From the NCBI GenBank assembly GCA_038496445.1, contig JALMLS010000505.1, positions 1 through 64,000 on the forward strand: a stretch of 64,000 nucleotides of DNA. The letters run 5' to 3'. The translations under genes and the position numbers were made by a program. Of the stretch, positions 28,023 to 48,738 are shown in pieces; position 1 is the stretch's first letter, and the number at the start of each line of letters is the position of its first letter. This stretch comes from Trichosphaerium sp. ATCC 40318 (lineage: Eukaryota > Protista > Tubulinea). The notes under the pieces were generated by a model. It did no database searches. It saw only the letters and a list, made by a program, of their open reading frames with translations, and was not told the DNA's origin.

Positions 28023-29776
28023 TCAAAACATGTTTGAAAAATGTTTCATAAATAATATTACTGTTTTGTTGTATCTCGTAATTATACCTTCAGCATACGT
28101 TCTATGTGCACACAAGTCACCACTACAATCCCATTCCCTATACTCTCCATGAAGCTCACCCTTATCATTGTAAAAGCAAAGAATCTTTAAGTAACCACTG
28201 GAATTCCGATGCCATTCCTTGTACTCATTGTTTAGCTTGCCATTTAGATAATAGCACTTCTTTTTAAGTTGGTTGTTGCATTCATTGTACTCTCCATTAA
28301 GCTCTCCTTCATTGTTATAAAAGCAATGAATGTGTAAATTACCATTGGAATGCCATTCCTTGTACTCCTTGTTCAACTGACCATTTACATAAAAGCAATA
28401 TTTAGATAATATACCTGTATCGAGCCACTCCTTATACTTTCCATGTAAAAGACCATTTACATAAGTACACTGTTTGCTTAACACACCATTCTCATATTCT
28501 TCCTTGTACTTCTTGTTCAACACGCCTTTGATGTAAAAGCATCTCTTACGCAATCTACCAGTTCTATACCAATCCTTATACTCTCCATCTAGGTTACCTT
28601 GACTGTCATAGCAACAATGTTTGTAAAGTACGCCATCCCAATACCACTCCTTGTATTCCTTGAACAAAACACCATTGAAATGAAAGCCTTGCTTACGTAA
28701 TCCCCCCTCACTATTCCACTCCTTGTACTTTCCGTTCAATTGTCCGTTATTGGAGTAATAACATTGTTTACGCAAGACGCTATTACCATGATACTCCTTA
28801 TACTCTCCTGTCAACATACCTTTATTGTCATAAAAGCAATGGATCATTAGCTTGTCTCGCTGGTACCATTTCTTGAACTCTCCGGTGAGATCACCATTTA
28901 CATAATAACAACGTTGTTGTAAGTAGCGTAAAGCACCACCAAAGAGGGTATACCACTCTTTATACTCACCCTCTAATTCACCATTAACATACGAACAGTC
29001 TTTCCATAATTGACCACTTCTTTTCATTTCTTTGTATTCCCCGTGTAGTTTACCTTTGACATAATGACATTGTTTACGCAATTCACTACTATTGGTATGC
29101 CACTCTTTGTACTCACCCTCTAATTTACCATTAACATACGAACAGTCTTTCCATAATTGACCATTTCTTTTCATTTCTTTGTATTCCCCGTGTAGTTTAC
29201 CTTTGATATAATGACATTGTTTACGCAATTCACTATTGGTATGCCACTCTTTGTACTCACCGTTGTATTTGCCAGCAACACGCCAACAGTGTATGCAACG
29301 TCGCCCATTTTTATACCATGTTTTAAACTCACCATCGTATTTGCCATCAACATACCAAGAGTGTACCTTAAGTTTCCCATTAGCATGCCACTGTTGGTAC
29401 TCTCCTTTCAAATTATCATTGCTGTACAAGCAGTGTTTTTTAAGTCGTCCGTTTCCAAACCACTCCTTGGACTCTCCATGGTGCTTACCATGTTTCCAAG
29501 AACCTTTCTGGAGAAGCTTCCACTTTTTCTTGTACAGGCCGTGCTTCTTCCACACACCATGTTTCCTGAGCTTGGAATCGAACCTTGTCGTCAAAGCCAC
29601 GTGTTTTGATAGTAATGGCTATTTGAGATAAGTTTCCGTATCCAAATCGATAATACAAAGGTGTAACTCCACAGGAAGGGTAAAAAGAGGACAAGACTCA
29701 GAGATATCTGTATTTCTCTAATAAGATCATTAAAAACTGAACTAAACAAACTGAATCGATGTACCACAACTTCCAT
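28023..29776 (-). pseudogene. F-box-like + ~20 MORN-variant repeats; nonsense codon in the F-box
   Basis: MEVV|47-nt intron|RNTDISESCPLFTLPVELHLCIIDLDTETYLK*PLL aligns to the paralogue's LLHLPVEIHLDIIDLDSKLYQIWPLL, with TAG at 29619-29621 replacing TGG. The downstream 525 codons (GEYKEWHxNG repeats) are intronless and open. Confidence 0.75.
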
Positions 29777-29957
29777 TGTTGTTTCAAGCGTTTTTTGTTC
29801 AAAAATAAAGTCAAACACAAGCAAGTTGACAGGCGTTCAACACGAAAACACGTGACACAAAGAAAAACAACACTTGTTCTAGTTTAAGGTTTATCAGACT
29901 GTATCGGGTCACAAGCAAAGGCAACTAAAGCTGTACTAAAGCGGGTTGTACTGTTTA

Positions 29958-30964
29958 TTAAGGGCACAAATTAAAGCAGCCACAGCACGTGAGGTAGAGA
30001 TCTCCGAGGCAAGCAGCGCAATCTGCACAACATTCGCAAACAGGATAGTCACAACTGCAAGATAGACCGCAAGAAGCCAACTTTACAGCACAATCTGCCT
30101 GAGGGCAATCACCACCAGCGTTATCCTTACTAACTTCTAACTTTCCGCACAAGTCGCCCCAGTGGTTGTCAATATCAAAGATACTAGTACTCTGTGGTCC
30201 AAGCCTAATACTTTCGATTGTTCGCGCCAACGTAGCTAGGTCGCTTCAGCAAGAGGATTCAAATTGAAGAAAAAGAGACTTCGAGGCTTACCTGTAGCTA
30301 GTTTTGATTGAGTTTTGTATGGCGCGTTTCCAACGGTTTCGTCCCAGTAGTCTGCCACAACATCAGTGTCGTTGTGTTGCCAATGATCGAGGTGATGTAC
30401 ACCAACACTTTCTTCGCCTGGCAGTCGGTTACTTTTTACGTCAAAAATCACGTGATTTGTTGGAACAGTTTGTCGACTTTTAAAGATGAAAGATTTGTAT
30501 ATTACGCAGTCCCGTACCAATGTAGGTGAATGCATCGAATGTAGGGACTTTCATCTTCCCTTCAAGAGGAAACTTGTAACATTTTGCTTTCTCTTCGGAT
30601 ATTTCAATAACGAACCTCTCACTCTACCATAGCGTCAACGAGAAAAAATTAACTACTTTCCAACTAAATAAAAAAAAAACCGGTTGAATACCCTATTGAA
30701 AAGACGATAGTACTCCCTTCGCATAGCCTTTCCCATGTGGTCTCTCTCTTCTGCTACTTTTTCAGCTTGTAGCGTTACATCATACCACCATCTGCCATGA
30801 GCTTGCTTCTCAGCATCCCTAAATAATCGTAAAAAAGGTCTCGTTTTAAAAAAGTGTCACCTTGTGTCAGTAAATGAAGCAGAGAAAGAATTTGGCCACA
30901 GAGGGGTTGGTACGGCAATAGCTACAACCAAAAACGCGAAAATTACAGTAATATAAGACTTCAT
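29958..30964 (-). CDS. Secreted ependymin-related (EPDR-like) protein with a C-terminal Twisted-gastrulation-like 14-Cys domain
   Basis: Signal peptide MKSYITVIFAFLVVAIA; PTPLWPNSFSASF, GRWWYD, KCYKFPL, FTYIGEESV..DHW, SIFDI..C; tail CPQADCAVKLASCGLSCSCDYPVCECCADCAACLGDLYLTCCGCFNLCP. Confidence 0.7.
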
Positions 30965-31639
30965 GCTTGTTGTTAAGAACACTTTATGGGAATGTATTGT
31001 GTGCACAAAGTGTCACATAAAATGTTCAGCATAGATAAAATTTGTTTCTTTGCAAAAAGTATTCTCTTACGCTTTTACATGTAACTAAGTGCTCTGTTCA
31101 GCCGGTTGAGTACAATGTGAACTTTAAATTTAACAATTGACTCAGAGACCTAGAAGAAAGCCTAAGAAAGCAGCAAGGATGGGAAAAAACAAGAAGGTTA
31201 TAACGTGACAAAGGGAAGACTAAGATTGTAAGAACAGTGAGTTACTATTAACAGAATAACTGTCAACAAAATACGTTCATTAAATGTACTTCCGGTAAAA
31301 TATTAACTCCTGCGAACTTGTCAACCATTCCGTTTTGAAACGTGTATCACTTGATTTGTACAGTTGAATGTTTCACCGCTATCCATGTGAGTATCTTATT
31401 GTAACAAATACTACAAACAATGAAGAGGAACCAGTTAATCTCATCTCACTACAGCAATAAACTCACTTCACTTAGCAAGAAACGGAGACGGCGAAAAAGT
31501 TTCAATATTGATAAGTCAGCGCTGATGTTAACGGCGTACAGCTTTACTATCCAGTAACGTAGCAAAATATCTATAAAACGAATAAACCGAGCAGCCTAGT
31601 AAAATTATTGCCTAATGTACAAGGAGGCTTTATTGTGAG

Positions 31640-32588
31640 TTACTTGTTAAACCCAAACCAAGATTGTACGGTCAAGAAGAACGAAGTACTATTTTCTGAA
31701 GGTATAATAACTCTCTCACTTGTAGATTCTTCTAAGTGGCGCCCTGCCTTTATATGCATATCTTCAGCACGGCTGATCATATCATCAAACATCTCAAAAA
31801 CGCCAGTGCCCTGTTAAAAGAAAAACAATCAGAAAAGGGACAAACAACAGAAGGAACGTTTTCTTATTTTTTTCTCGTACTTCTTTTGCACTGACTTCAA
31901 AATATGAAACACCCCAAAAGTCTGCCAGCTCACGTCCTTCTTTGGTTGATACATCTCGTTTATCTTTTAAATCTATTTTGTTGCCTACAATGGCAATACA
32001 ACATTGCTGATCTTTTGTTAACTCCATCACCTTTTCATACTTTGCTACTCTTTCAAAAGTGTTTCGTTGTGTGACATCAAACACAACAAATGCTATGTGG
32101 CTTCCTCTAACAAACGATCTGGCTTAAAATTTACATTAGCATATTAGCAGGAGGTAATAATATTACTTAGATTTGATAAACCCCGCTCCCTTCCAGCAGT
32201 ACTAAAAAAAGTCAACATTTTCTTATGTTTTCTGTCACGTGTTTTTAGCAGGAAAGACGATACGTACTCCCATATTTGTAACTTTATGTCTTTGATCACT
32301 TTCCCTTGTAGGTGTTTAATGTACTAAAACAAGATGAGATTCTAACTAAACGACCACAAAAAGAATGTAACATACAAACTCTACACCAATAGTCATCCTG
32401 CTATCTGAGAATTTATTTTCATTGTATCTTCTAATAATTGATGATTTACCCACTCGTAGACCTGTTTGATAGTAAACTAGCGAGAATAAGTTAAAAACAG
32501 TACCAGTGTCGCCCAACAGTATTATTTTGGTTGGAACAGTCTTCTTTCTATATTTAGGAGCGGTATTATTTGCTGTTCCCTTCGGCAT
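31640..32588 (-). CDS. Atypical Rab-like GTPase (paralogue A)
   Basis: GDTGVGKSS, TIGVEF, WDTAGRER, GNKID, EVSAK; ends QSWFGFNK* with no prenylation Cys. Confidence 0.85.
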
Positions 32589-33100
32589 TGTCGGTTACTG
32601 TTTTTATGAAAACTGAAATAAAAAGAATGTCACTGACTGCTTTTTATGACTCAAGTGTGACTAGTTTTCCCCAAGCTCGATGGAGAGCTTGTGTTGTACT
32701 GTACTGTAAAGCCGATCGCGCCTGTATTTAAGCTTGCTTAAGCCAATAAACCAAACAGTGTGACCAGTGTTTGTGCGAATTCTTTCAGCTTGTCACACTT
32801 CTTTTAAAGCATCACACATTGTCAACCAATGACGAGCCTGAAATTGTTGGAAGGCTAGCAAACTAGTATAGCGACATTAGGCTTATACCGATGTCTGGAA
32901 TGACCAGTAATTGGGTCAATTCCATAAATGCTACCAGTGAGACAGTTAAAGTGCCAAGAACTCACTATCAAGAAAAAAAATAAGACTTGAATGAGACAAT
33001 AGTAAGATTGCAAACGTACCGACCTATTGTTGACCCAAATGCAACTTTTTTTTTTGTTTGCTTTCACGAAAATTGGAGAAGAGACGCATTAACACACGAA

Positions 33101-46874: not shown

Positions 46875-47160
46875 ATCGCCATTTGTATGTTTGTGCTTTA
46901 AATATTTATAGCCTTGTTATTTAATATTACGGTATTCCTTGAAACGTTAAAGTACAAAACTATGCTGGTAAAAGCCTCACAAAGACTATACAGTATTAAT
47001 ATTCATTTAGAAAGAAACAACTTGTTATTTGTCAACATCTCCTTTTTTATGCACTCTTGACAGTTTTTTTATGCCAGTTGCTGTAACATACAAACTCTGC
47101 TTGTTAATTGTAAAGGTACGCTGGATCTCCTGAATATAAAAGGAGGTTTATTGTTTTATG

Positions 47161-48196
47161 TTACTTATTTAATCCAAACCAAGATTGAATGGCTGAGAAA
47201 AATGAGCCATGGTTTTCTGAAGTTGTACCATCTTTCTCAGAAGGTATTTTCTCTAAATGGCGTCCTGCCTTCACACAAACATCTTCAGCACGGCTGATCA
47301 TTTCATCAAACATCTCAAAAACGCCAGTGCCCTGTTAAAAGAAAATCAGAAAAGGGAAGAATACAGAAAGAACGTTTTCTTATTTTTTTCTCGTACTTCT
47401 TTTGCACTGACTTCAAAATATGAAACACCCCAAAAGTCTGCCAACTCGCGTCCTTCTTTTGTCGATACCTCTCGTTTATCTTTTAAATCTATTTTGTTGC
47501 CTACAATGGCAATACAACATTGTTGATCTTTTGTTAACTCCATCACCTTTTCATACTTTGCTACTCTTTCAAACGTGTTTCGTTGTGTGACGTCAAACAC
47601 AACAAATGCTATGTGGCTTCCTCTACTGTATACTATAAATTAAGTTAATATGTATTGTATACTAGAAGGTACTACCAAGAGTGGATATTCCCCGCTCTCG
47701 TCCAGAAGTACTAAAAAAAAATAAGGTTTCGTTCACCTGGATTTTAAACTAATACGTACTCCCATATTTGAAGTTTGATATCATTAATCACTTTCCCTTT
47801 TGTGTGTTTAAAGAACTAACATCGCGTTTAGATTATATTCCGGGCTCTATTATGACAATTGTTTGAAGGACAACAAGAACATGAAGATGTAACGTGTTGC
47901 AAAATAAAAAGTAGGTTCCAAGCACGTGTATTTTTTTTTGTTCCCGTGGAAGCAATTTCAAACTACAACGTACGAAATCTACGCCAATGTTCAATCGCCT
48001 ATCCGAGAATGTGTTTTCAACATATCTTCTTATGATCGATGATTTACCTGTCCGCATACCTGGTGGATAGTCAACAACATTGTAATAAAGCTACTTAACT
48101 TCTAAACACAGTACCTGTATCGCCTAAAAGTACTAGTTTTGTTCCGACTGTCTTTTGTCCATAATTTCGTGGTGTATTAGCGGTTCCCTTCGGCAT
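47161..48196 (-). CDS. Atypical Rab-like GTPase (paralogue B)
   Basis: MPKGTAN start, GKSSIIRRY, NIGVDF, WDTSGRER; central exon nearly identical to paralogue A; ends QSWFGLNK*. Confidence 0.85.
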
Positions 48197-48738
48197 TGGT
48201 AGGTTTTGTGGCTGGTTTTATTTGAAAAGTTGAAACGATGCTTGCAGAATATCGTTGACTGTACTCGTTGTGTTTTGTGTACGTAACCATTTAGTTTTGG
48301 TTAAACATACGGAGTATTTGCGTGTACAGCAGAGCTTATGTCAAAACAACGCCAAGTCATTGCATATCAAAGGTAAATACACTATGTTTATTCGGTGGTT
48401 TAAAACTTATCCCAACTTTTTCTTCCATCAATTGAAAGATTAATCATGTTTACACTAATCGTTATAAGCACGTGATAGAGTGAAGAAAAACGTAACCTTG
48501 TTCTCAAGTCAGTAGCATGCAATAGTTCTATGTTAATGACAATGATCTGCACACAGCAAACTTGGCGACTTAAACTTTGGTTTATAGTTTTTATAGCTTA
48601 AACTGAAGGTTCTGCAACACTACAACGCTTTGGTTATGTGAGTTTCTTTAATAGTACATAGTTCCATTACAACACTGTTATTGCAAACTGTTGTAAAATA
48701 ATATTACCAACATGCAGAGCTGTTCTTAGTTTTTTCCT

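What the first reader, a model, noticed from the sequence alone, without database searches (positions are those of the whole stretch)
29961..30107. Twisted-gastrulation-like 14-cysteine domain on an ependymin-like protein in an apparently non-animal genome
Seen: tail C-x4-C-x6-C-x3-C-x-C-x4-C-x-CC-x2-C-x2-C-LG-x5-CC-x-C-x3-CP. Known (recalled): the BMP-binding N-terminal domain of animal Tsg/TWSG1 has 14 Cys in the pattern C-x4-C-x6-C-x5-C-x-C-x4/6-C-x-CC-x2-C-x2-C-LG-x5-CC-x-C-x3-C, and Tsg is generally regarded as metazoan. The spacing plus the LG motif match almost exactly. Here it is appended to a secreted EPDR/LolA-fold-like lipid-binding domain. Inference: a pre-metazoan origin (or horizontal transfer) of a BMP-modulator domain with a BMP-independent function.
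Basis: partly seen in the sequence, partly recalled or inferred. Interest (0 to 1): 0.82.

Follow-up and report, generated by a model that had tools for sequence, protein, structure and literature searches.

The report
Amoeba protein carrying a Twisted-gastrulation domain
A marine amoeba makes a secreted protein that ends in the same small, seven-disulfide module that animals use in Twisted gastrulation to hold BMP growth factors, and close relatives of the module sit on giant-virus-like DNA, so this "animal" signalling part also exists outside animals.

Summary
Window 29961-30107 (minus strand) encodes the last 49 residues of a 246-aa secreted protein. Spliced cDNA contigs from four runs confirm the five-exon gene.

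The 14-Cys tail passes Pfam's Tsg_N cut-off (29.8 bits against 25). A profile built only from non-animal relatives hits human TWSG1 and nothing else among the PDB sequences (E 1.2e-9). The score collapses when the non-Cys residues are shuffled. TWSG1 or Tsg is the top structural match in three libraries, though each match is weak on its own.

The protein is 100% identical to a transcript labelled Trichosphaerium sp. ATCC 40318 (Amoebozoa).

New here: the tail belongs to a family of about 40 small secreted proteins, mostly on AT-rich, intron-free, orphan-gene-rich contigs with tRNA synthetases and ankyrin repeats. One contig is a labelled giant-virus genome. The motif is absent from 185,579 prokaryotic genomes. 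The BMP-contact residues are not kept.

The ependymin-like call for the N-terminal domain is only weakly supported. Whether the domain is ancient or was moved by viruses is unresolved.

No searchable paper reports Tsg in amoebae or giant viruses, and the scan had not noted it before.

The parts
29937..30985 (-). Whole transcribed unit: five exons, 783 nt of mRNA, 246-codon CDS from ATG 30964 to stop 29958-29960.
   Evidence: Spliced contigs of runs X1 and X3 span all five exons with no mismatch. The X1 contig carries a template-switch cDNA adaptor at the 5' end.
30860..30985 (-). Exon 1: 21-nt 5'UTR plus codons 1-35. Residues 1-19 (30908-30964) look like a signal peptide.
   Evidence: The signal peptide is judged by eye (MK, hydrophobic stretch, AVP|TP); no predictor was run.
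30692..30817 (-). Exon 2, codons 36-77.
   Evidence: Joints 30817/30860 and 30623/30692 are seen in four runs.
30517..30623 (-). Exon 3, codons 78 to part of 113. Contains Cys92.
30292..30416 (-). Exon 4, from part of codon 113 to part of codon 155.
   Evidence: The 30416/30517 joint is seen in X1 and X3.
29937..30235 (-). Exon 5: codons 155-246, the stop, and an AATAAA (29954-29959) that overlaps the stop.
30129..30907 (-). N-terminal domain, residues 20-190 (the span includes the introns). Probably of the ependymin / DUF8395 (LolA-like) kind. Cys92 and Cys184 may form its disulfide.
   Evidence: Weak: Pfam PF25544 E 0.23; ESM features 0.92-0.94 to DUF8395 and Ependymin clusters. No sequence relatives were found by the word search. 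The AF2 model is poor.
29961..30107 (-). Tsg_N-like domain, residues 198-246. It has 14 Cys, which would form 7 disulfides if they pair as in TWSG1, and is modelled as a three-helix bundle.
   Evidence: Pfam PF23782 above its cut-off. A profile of the non-animal relatives hits only TWSG1 in the PDB sequences. The AF2 model has three helices, pLDDT 73. TWSG1 or Tsg is the top hit in Foldseek-PDB, VIA-wide and the ESM-Atlas shape search.

Best explanation
The gene encodes a secreted two-domain protein of the amoeba Trichosphaerium.

Shown:
- The C-terminal 49 residues are a genuine homologue of the N-terminal domain of animal Twisted gastrulation (Pfam Tsg_N). In human TWSG1 that domain is a three-helix bundle of about 50 residues locked by seven disulfides.
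- The amoeba copy belongs to a non-animal subfamily with Cys spacing 4-6-3-1-4-1-2-2-7-1-3 and core motif C-x-C-D-x-P-x-C-E-C-C. Its other members are small secreted proteins, encoded mostly on giant-virus-like contigs and in uncultured microbial eukaryotes.
- The gene is spliced and expressed.

Inferred:
- The N-terminal domain of about 170 residues is an ependymin/DUF8395-type beta-sheet pocket that binds a hydrophobic ligand.
- The Tsg_N-like knot is a rigid, protease-resistant docking module. It would present the hydrophobic face of its first helix (Ala204, Leu207, Leu212, matching TWSG1 Ala32, Val35, Ile40) to a partner that is not a BMP, and so tether or target the lipid-binding domain outside the cell or in the endolysosomal lumen.
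- The domain is a mobile module shared between protists, their giant viruses and animals. Animal Tsg is one use of it. The direction and date of transfer are not resolved.
For: Gene model and expression: (four GT..AG joints, cDNA adaptor).

Host: (P0001 100% identical), then (EukProt/MMETSP0405, taxid 498012, Trichosphaerium sp., Amoebozoa).

Homology to Tsg_N:
- Pfam 29.8 bits against a cut-off of 25.
- The exhaustive phmmer search gave 28 hits at E<=1e-3, and 24 of the 28 aligned sequences (the window's protein included) carry Tsg_N. They include P0019, which has the animal-type PIPSLF motif, and P0002, which has both Tsg_N and the Tsg C-domain.
- All 14 Cys are invariant across 24 sequences.
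- A profile without P0019 and P0002 hits only TWSG1 among 177,635 PDB sequences, E 1.2e-9.

Giant-virus link: GVMAG-S-1016713-46 in IMG/VR. Contexts of P0029, P0013, P0038, P0020 and P0010 and of contigs L011-L022 are dense intron-free orphan genes with tRNA synthetases and Ank, RING, Kelch, TPR and collagen repeats. The AT-rich ones are 23-33% GC.

Not prokaryotic: 0 matches in 596 Gb of bacterial and archaeal genomes.

N-terminal domain: and PMC6280359 (EPDRs occur in Amoebozoa, with conserved Cys near alignment positions 94 and 186).
Against: - The disulfide pairing is assumed, not shown.
- The N-terminal domain has no significant family hit and no confident model, so 'lipid-binding' is a guess from weak leads.
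- No partner, ligand or location is known.
- The viral nature of most relatives' contigs is judged from gene content and composition. No capsid or polymerase marker was seen in the stretches fetched, and only one contig carries a giant-virus label.
- The host label rests on one transcriptome record plus coded run names.
Confidence: 0.75

Rival explanations
1. Virus-to-host capture. The Tsg_N-like module entered the Trichosphaerium lineage from a giant virus (or from a viral insertion) and was fused to a resident ependymin-like gene. The non-animal copies would then say nothing about a pre-animal, vertically inherited origin. The viral family might itself descend from an animal gene captured long ago.
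For: Most close relatives lie on giant-virus-like contigs, and one is a labelled GVMAG. The fusion with this N-terminal domain appears in only one of 1.84 billion representatives. An intron-free MORN-repeat gene, a gene type also seen beside a viral copy, lies next door.
Against: The gene has four spliceosomal introns, and its composition matches the surrounding window (about 39% GC locally, 36% overall). No intron separates the tail from the end of the N-terminal domain. Relatives also occur on GC-rich contigs (54-65% GC), some with apparent exon ends, and in one MMETSP transcriptome, which suggests cellular owners too. The tree cannot be rooted or resolved.
Confidence: 0.3
2. The resemblance is convergent: a cysteine-rich, low-complexity tail that matches Tsg_N only through cysteine content and spacing.
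For: Single-sequence phmmer against the PDB gives only E=3 for TWSG1 after bias correction. The structure-search statistics are weak.
Against: The Pfam cut-off is passed. The profile search returns TWSG1 alone at 1e-9 to 1e-10 and no other Cys-rich protein. With Cys positions fixed, shuffling the remaining residues drops the score from 39.4 to 10.8 +/- 5.0, and 0 of 1000 shuffles reach the real score. Non-Cys positions are shared as well: Ala after the second Cys, and LG after the tenth.
Confidence: 0.04
3. The sequence is not the amoeba's own. It would come from an animal, from prey or from another contaminant in the culture or assembly.
For: The MMETSP cultures were not axenic. The run organism names are coded, and five different labels hold the transcript.
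Against: The gene lies inside a 64-kb contig of uniform composition with short-intron genes. Earlier follow-up notes on other parts of this genome call it an amoeba-like protist. The tail has the non-animal spacing signature (x3 loop) and groups away from the animal sequences. The protein has no Tsg C-domain.
Confidence: 0.03
4. The tail is not a docking module. It is a membrane-active or metal-binding peptide: a disulfide-locked helical bundle acting like saposin or amoebapore-type proteins, or a thiolate cluster acting like metallothionein. It might be released from the carrier domain.
Against: The signal peptide implies oxidative folding, which does not fit free thiolates. All 14 Cys match the seven-disulfide TWSG1 scheme (PMC11167000). 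No family or fold match to saposin-like proteins rises above background. No processing site is evident.
Confidence: 0.07

Closest known systems
N-terminal domain of Twisted gastrulation (human TWSG1 NTD, PDB 8BWL/8BWA; Pfam PF23782 Tsg_N)
   Same: It has 14 cysteines in the same order, the LG motif after the tenth Cys, and a size of about 50 residues. It is predicted as a three-helix bundle. It follows a secretory signal in the same protein. The profile E-value to TWSG1 is 1e-9 to 1e-10, and sequence identity is 34-39% over 47-51 aligned residues.
   Different: Two loops are two residues shorter: x3 instead of x5 between Cys3 and Cys4, and x4 instead of x6 between Cys5 and Cys6. The GDF5-contacting residues Lys28, Asp34 and Glu42 are replaced or deleted; only the hydrophobic positions are kept (Ile40 becomes Leu212). 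The domain sits at the C-terminus rather than the N-terminus. The host has no BMP ligands (established knowledge: TGF-beta ligands are animal-specific).
Full-length Twisted gastrulation / Crossveinless (Pfam PF04668 Tsg C-terminal region plus Tsg_N)
   Same: Both are secreted proteins that carry the Tsg_N module.
   Different: There is no Tsg C-terminal, Chordin-binding domain, so this is not a Tsg orthologue. Among the non-animal relatives only P0002 has a detectable Tsg C-domain. The C-terminal Cys domain of the virus-like proteins does not match it.
Small secreted Tsg_N-like proteins on giant-virus-like and environmental contigs (P0002-P0039, L004/L012 GVMAG-S-1016713-46, L010-L024)
   Same: They share 41-62% identity in the domain, and most share the same Cys spacing. 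They also share the motif CxCDxPxCECC and the LGD(L/M)(W/Y/F)xxCC segment.
   Different: In them the domain follows the signal peptide directly and comes before a glycosylation-rich linker and other Cys-rich modules. Their genes lack introns. None has the window protein's N-terminal domain.
Ependymin-related proteins (EPDR1; Pfam PF00811, PF25544 Ependymin_amoebozoa) and plant/protist DUF8395 (At4g14100-like)
   Same: Both have a signal peptide and a mature domain of about 170-200 residues. Two Cys sit at 92 and 184, close to the conserved EPDR alignment positions 94 and 186. EPDRs are known in Amoebozoa (PMC6280359). The language-model features are nearest to these families.
   Different: The first conserved EPDR cysteine is missing. 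No family reaches significance (best E 0.23). No structure could be obtained. No EPDR is reported with a Tsg_N tail.

Membership tests
Tsg_N domain (Pfam PF23782) | Scores above the curated Pfam gathering cut-off. | tested here: met
   29.8 bits on exon 5 and 25.8 bits on the full protein, against a cut-off of 25.
Tsg_N domain (Pfam PF23782) | Fourteen cysteines in the order C..C..C..C.C..C.CC..C..C-LG..CC.C..C. | tested here: met
   All 14 align with TWSG1 and are invariant in 24 relatives. Two loops are 2 residues shorter than in animals.
Tsg_N domain (Pfam PF23782) | Compact three-helix bundle (PMC11167000). | tested here: inconclusive
Tsg_N domain (Pfam PF23782) | Seven intradomain disulfides. 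| not testable with these tools
   Needs mass spectrometry or an experimental structure.
Tsg_N domain (Pfam PF23782) | BMP-binding surface (TWSG1 Lys28, Ala32, Asp34, Val35, Ile40, Glu42). | tested here: not met
   By the alignments, Lys28 becomes Gln, Asp34 becomes Lys, and Glu42 falls in the 2-residue deletion. Only Ala32 (Ala), Val35 (Leu) and Ile40 (Leu) stay hydrophobic. The residue list is from PMC11167000.
Twisted gastrulation protein (orthologue of Tsg/TWSG1) | Tsg C-terminal, Chordin-binding domain (PF04668) following the N-domain. | tested here: not met
   There is no PF04668 hit on P0001, and the domain is at the C-terminus after an unrelated domain.
Ependymin-related proteins (PF00811 / PF25544) | Significant match to a family profile. 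| tested here: not met
   The best hit is PF25544 at E 0.23, 11.8 bits against a cut-off of 27. There is no PDB sequence hit.
Ependymin-related proteins (PF00811 / PF25544) | Signal peptide, about 200 residues, conserved cysteines near alignment positions 23, 94 and 186 (PMC6280359). | tested here: inconclusive
   The signal peptide and the length fit. Cys92 and Cys184 are present, and the first cysteine is absent. Positions were compared by number only, not by alignment.
Ependymin-related proteins (PF00811 / PF25544) | LolA-like beta-sheet fold with a hydrophobic pocket. | tested here: inconclusive
   The AF2 model of this part has pLDDT below 50 because no homologues were available for an alignment. 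ESM feature similarity to DUF8395 and Ependymin clusters is 0.92-0.94, with 171-175 shared features for the top three, all DUF8395.

The most novel reading that the evidence does not exclude
The ligand-gripping module of Twisted gastrulation did not arise with animal BMP signalling. It is an older disulfide-knot domain that circulates among protists and their giant viruses. Animals recruited it, by descent or through a virus, into the BMP/Chordin system. A core 'developmental toolkit' part would then predate its own ligand.
Probability: 0.4. Interest if true: 0.8.

Novelty: new variant of a known kind. Interest (0 to 1): 0.62.

Why it matters
The 2024 TWSG1 structure paper called both Tsg domains previously unseen folds with no structural relatives in the PDB (PMC11167000). 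BMP regulators are usually treated as animal inventions. This finding adds three things:
- an expressed, intron-bearing amoebozoan gene that carries the N-domain;
- a family of several dozen relatives on giant-virus-like and protist contigs;
- one environmental protein (P0002) that has both Tsg domains.

The origin of a BMP modulator therefore becomes testable. It also offers natural variants of a 50-residue, seven-disulfide scaffold whose binding surface has diverged, and it raises the question of what giant viruses do with it.

Tried and rejected
1. The search for related loci on viral contigs with alignments A2 and A3: 25 and 72 pattern matches, none confirmed by its tblastn step. A degenerate DNA pattern was used instead, and it found the GVMAG contig.
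2. The word-index search with the family alignment was swamped by 8000 candidates and returned only input sequences. With P0002 it returned only P0002 itself. With the N-terminal domain it returned only the window's own protein.
3. AF2 on the full protein: the N-terminal domain came out below pLDDT 50. The Foldseek search with that model is meaningless.
4. I suspected that the C-terminal Cys domain of the virus-like proteins equals the Tsg C-domain. Its profile hits neither TWSG1 nor Pfam Tsg, so the idea was dropped.
5. The ESM-Atlas feature search of the 55-residue tail and of P0021 gave nothing usable. BFVD viral structures gave no match.
6. Hits P0003, P0005 and P0027 are large bacterial Ig-like repeat proteins. 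They match only a 23-residue motif upstream of the tail, multiplied by their repeat number. I judged this to be chance.
7. The exact-protein contig look-up for P0001 found nothing. For the short Logan contigs it gave no taxonomic information.
8. The spliced protein was never typed into a tool. It was reached through its database id, P0001.

Full report
**What is at the site**

The minus strand of window 29961-30107 encodes CPQADCAVKLASCGLSCSCDYPVCECCADCAACLGDLYLTCCGCFNLCP followed by a stop.

The sequence is the end of a five-exon gene. Laying public contigs on 29700-31300 gave four joints with GT..AG ends on the minus strand: 30860/30817, 30692/30623, 30517/30416 and 30292/30235. Two runs (X1, X3) have a single contig that spans all five exons without a mismatch, and two more (X6, X8) cover parts. 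The X1 contig ends in a template-switch cDNA adaptor (recognised from my own knowledge of the SMART oligo). It is therefore RNA-derived and marks the 5' end near 30985.

The spliced CDS (ATG 30964, stop 29958-29960, with AATAAA overlapping the stop) gives 246 residues. In order they are:
- an apparent signal peptide, residues 1-19 (judged by eye);
- a domain of about 170 residues with Cys92 and Cys184;
- a short linker;
- the 14-Cys tail, residues 198-246.

The gene is single-copy in the window.

**Whose genome**

The exhaustive HMMER search with the last exon returned a 246-aa protein that is 100% identical (P0001). Its source record is EukProt CAMPEP_0168509378 from MMETSP0405, TAXON_ID 498012. 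That taxid is Trichosphaerium sp. ATCC 40318, Amoebozoa. Earlier follow-up notes on other parts of this genome independently call it an amoeba-like protist. The window is 34-40% GC throughout. I did not verify a second gene against the transcriptome, and the run organism names are coded. A culture contaminant is not strictly excluded, but it is unlikely.

**Is the tail a Tsg N-domain?**

The sequence evidence is strong:
- Pfam Tsg_N (PF23782) matches at E 7e-7, 29.8 bits against a curated cut-off of 25, covering profile positions 2-53 of 59. On the full protein the score is 25.8 bits.
- The exhaustive search of 1.84 billion representatives gave 28 proteins at E<=1e-3. Twenty-four of the 28 aligned sequences, the window's own protein included, carry Tsg_N, with a best E of 1e-16.
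- Among them, P0019 has the animal-type linker motif PIPSLF.
- P0002 matches both Tsg_N (E 9.5e-10) and the Tsg C-terminal region PF04668 (E 1.9e-12).
- All 14 Cys are invariant across 24 aligned domains, and D217, P219 and G232 are nearly so.
- A profile of these domains hits only TWSG1 among 177,635 distinct PDB sequences, at E 1.5e-10.
- After removing P0019 and P0002, so that no animal-like sequence is in the profile, TWSG1 is still the only hit, at E 1.2e-9.

As a control for cysteine composition and spacing I scored the human TWSG1 NTD, as printed, against that profile:

| Sequence scored | Real score | Cys fixed, rest shuffled | Fully shuffled |
|---|---|---|---|
| Human TWSG1 NTD | 39.4 bits | 10.8 +/- 5.0 (max 26.4; 0 of 1000 reach real) | -11.1 +/- 3.9 |
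| P0019 domain | 51.2 bits | 18.0 +/- 5.0 (0 of 1000 reach real) | -10.6 +/- 4.0 |

The match therefore rests on non-cysteine residues as well.

**Fold**

With the 25-sequence domain alignment, AF2 gives three helices (9-22, 34-40, 43-50) at mean pLDDT 73. The TWSG1 NTD is described as a compact bundle of three helices locked by seven disulfides, with no structural relative in the PDB (PMC11167000).

- Foldseek against the PDB returns four matches at E<=10. All are TWSG1 chains: TM 0.54-0.59, rmsd 3.8-4.5 A, 35-39% identity.
- The ESM-Atlas shape search puts an arthropod 'Protein twisted gastrulation' cluster first (TM 0.63 by the query, 53 residues aligned).

Each of these is weak alone, as expected for 50 residues. 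Together they agree with the sequence evidence.

**How it differs from animal Tsg**

The Cys spacing here is 4-6-3-1-4-1-2-2-7-1-3. That is the most common spacing among the non-animal sequences. Human TWSG1 has 4-6-5-1-6-... and P0019 has 4-6-5-1-4-....

In the TWSG1-GDF5 complex the contacts centre on helix 1: Lys28, Ala32, Ser33, Asp34, Val35, Ile40 and Glu42 (PMC11167000). By the alignments:
- Lys28 corresponds to Gln200.
- Ala32 corresponds to Ala204.
- Ser33 corresponds to Val205.
- Asp34 corresponds to Lys206.
- Val35 corresponds to Leu207.
- Ile40 corresponds to Leu212.
- Glu42 falls in the two-residue deletion.

The hydrophobic stripe is kept, and the salt-bridge and calcium-site residues are not. 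The domain is C-terminal here, and there is no Tsg C-domain. This is a Tsg_N-family domain, not a Tsg orthologue. Amoebozoa have no TGF-beta ligands (established knowledge), so the function must be BMP-independent.

**The wider family**

The relatives are small proteins of about 85-280 aa. The domain comes right after a signal peptide and is followed by an NxS/T-rich linker and other Cys-rich modules.

Their genomic contexts are dense and intron-free, and most of the neighbouring genes have no family match:
- P0029 lies on a 70-kb contig next to a class I tRNA synthetase, a radical-SAM protein and a methyltransferase.
- P0013 lies on a 33-kb contig with MORN, ankyrin, RING and GDSL-lipase genes.
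- P0038, P0020 and P0010 lie with ankyrin, RING, Kelch and a class II tRNA synthetase.
- These loci are 23-33% GC.

A degenerate DNA pattern for the motif CxCDxPxCECC gave these counts:
- One match in IMG/VR, on GVMAG-S-1016713-46, a giant-virus metagenome-assembled genome. The ORF there has a signal peptide and the domain.
- Fifteen contigs in the JGI metagenomes, with the pattern extended by xxC.
- None in 596 Gb of bacterial and archaeal genomes, with the same extended pattern.

Neighbours on the larger metagenome contigs again include ankyrin, TPR and collagen-like repeats and a tRNA synthetase, among orphan genes. I saw no capsid or polymerase marker in the stretches fetched, so 'giant-virus-like' is an inference except for the labelled contig.

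Some members sit on GC-rich contigs (54-65% GC). Some of these ORFs end in the middle of the domain, as an exon would. One member comes from an MMETSP transcriptome. Cellular eukaryotes other than Trichosphaerium probably own copies too.

The contigs also carry a second subfamily that lacks the LG motif (…CVTATxADCCECLFPGWSGC).

In a 48-column tree the two animal-like sequences group together (support 89/75) apart from 29 microbial ones. The window's domain sits on a short branch in an unresolved comb. This places it in the microbial group but says nothing about direction or age.

**The N-terminal domain**

- The word search found no relative.
- The PDB sequence search found nothing credible.
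- Pfam gives only Ependymin_amoebozoa at E 0.23, below a spurious YqfD hit.
- Language-model features put DUF8395 (At4g14100-like) clusters first (0.94, 0.92, 0.92; 171-175 shared features), then Ependymin clusters at 0.90-0.92. All ten best family-bearing hits fall in one family or clan.

EPDRs are documented in Amoebozoa. They are secreted, about 200 residues long, and have conserved cysteines near alignment positions 23, 94 and 186, with 94-186 proposed to pair (PMC6280359). This protein has Cys92 and Cys184 and lacks the first one.

AF2 without homologues failed for this part. I therefore rate 'ependymin/LolA-like' as probable but not shown.

**Mechanism, with its status**

- Shown: the protein is expressed and spliced, carries a secretory-type leader, and has a Tsg_N-homologous tail of the non-animal type.
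- Inferred from the TWSG1 structure: the tail is a rigid seven-disulfide three-helix knot that docks by the hydrophobic face of helix 1.
- Inferred from weak leads: the N-domain is a hydrophobic-ligand pocket.
- Proposed: the tail anchors or targets the carrier domain to a non-BMP partner.

The rival explanations (viral capture as the origin, convergence, contamination, a membrane-active or metal-binding peptide) are weighed in their own sections.

**Novelty**

Full-text searches pairing 'twisted gastrulation' with 'giant virus', 'amoeb' or 'non-metazoan' returned nothing relevant. The scan's own notes hold no earlier Tsg finding. Public tables already tag these proteins with PF23782 automatically. 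The domain assignment is therefore not new to the databases, but the taxonomic reach, the viral association and this fusion appear to be undescribed.

Noticed in passing
window 31614-32590 and 47133-48198 (minus strand): The Rab-like small GTPase gene just upstream of the finding has a diverged second copy 15 kb away. The two blocks are 80% and 70% identical at the nucleotide level.
   Followed up: partly
window 28023-29600 (minus strand): An intron-free 525-codon ORF made of MORN_2 repeats (Pfam E 1.8e-22) lies tail-to-head with the gene. It contains internal 147-nt units that are 91% alike. MORN, ankyrin and RING genes also flank a Tsg_N-like gene on a giant-virus-like contig.
   Followed up: partly
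L011, L013, L015, L016, L017, L021, L024 (metagenome contigs): These contigs carry a second subfamily of the Cys domain. It lacks the LG motif and has a conserved ...AEKVKCVAA..GCG..C.CD.PVCECC..CLACVTAT.ADCCECLFPGWSGC core, followed by varied Cys-rich tails.
   Followed up: no
L019:5142-6587 (+), contig of 54% GC: A 482-aa secreted protein joins a Tsg_N-like domain, several repeats of a 'W.YWEYE..C..C' module, and the same C-terminal CC....CCCY domain seen in the small virus-like proteins. An ABC-transporter ATPase gene lies nearby.
   Followed up: no
L003:573-1214 (+), protein P0002: The closest relative of the window's tail (66% identity over the 50-residue match) is an intron-free 213-aa protein. 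It has both Tsg_N and the Tsg C-terminal domain, sits on a 1.4-kb contig of unknown origin, and has no close relatives in the word-index search. It may be a non-animal full-length Tsg.
   Followed up: partly
P0001 residues 175-198 (window about 30105-30176, minus strand): The 23-residue stretch DIDNHWGDLCGKLEVSKDNAGGDC resembles a motif repeated a dozen times in giant bacterial Ig-like/HYR surface proteins (P0003). I judged this to be chance, inflated by the repeat number.
   Followed up: yes
window 30066, 30072, 30742 and 30416-30486: Other runs show strain variants. Two are third-codon-position changes in the Cys domain, read as synonymous, seen in X6. One is D61N, seen in X8. One X6 contig runs from exon 4 into intron 3, so it is either unspliced RNA or DNA.
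   Followed up: partly
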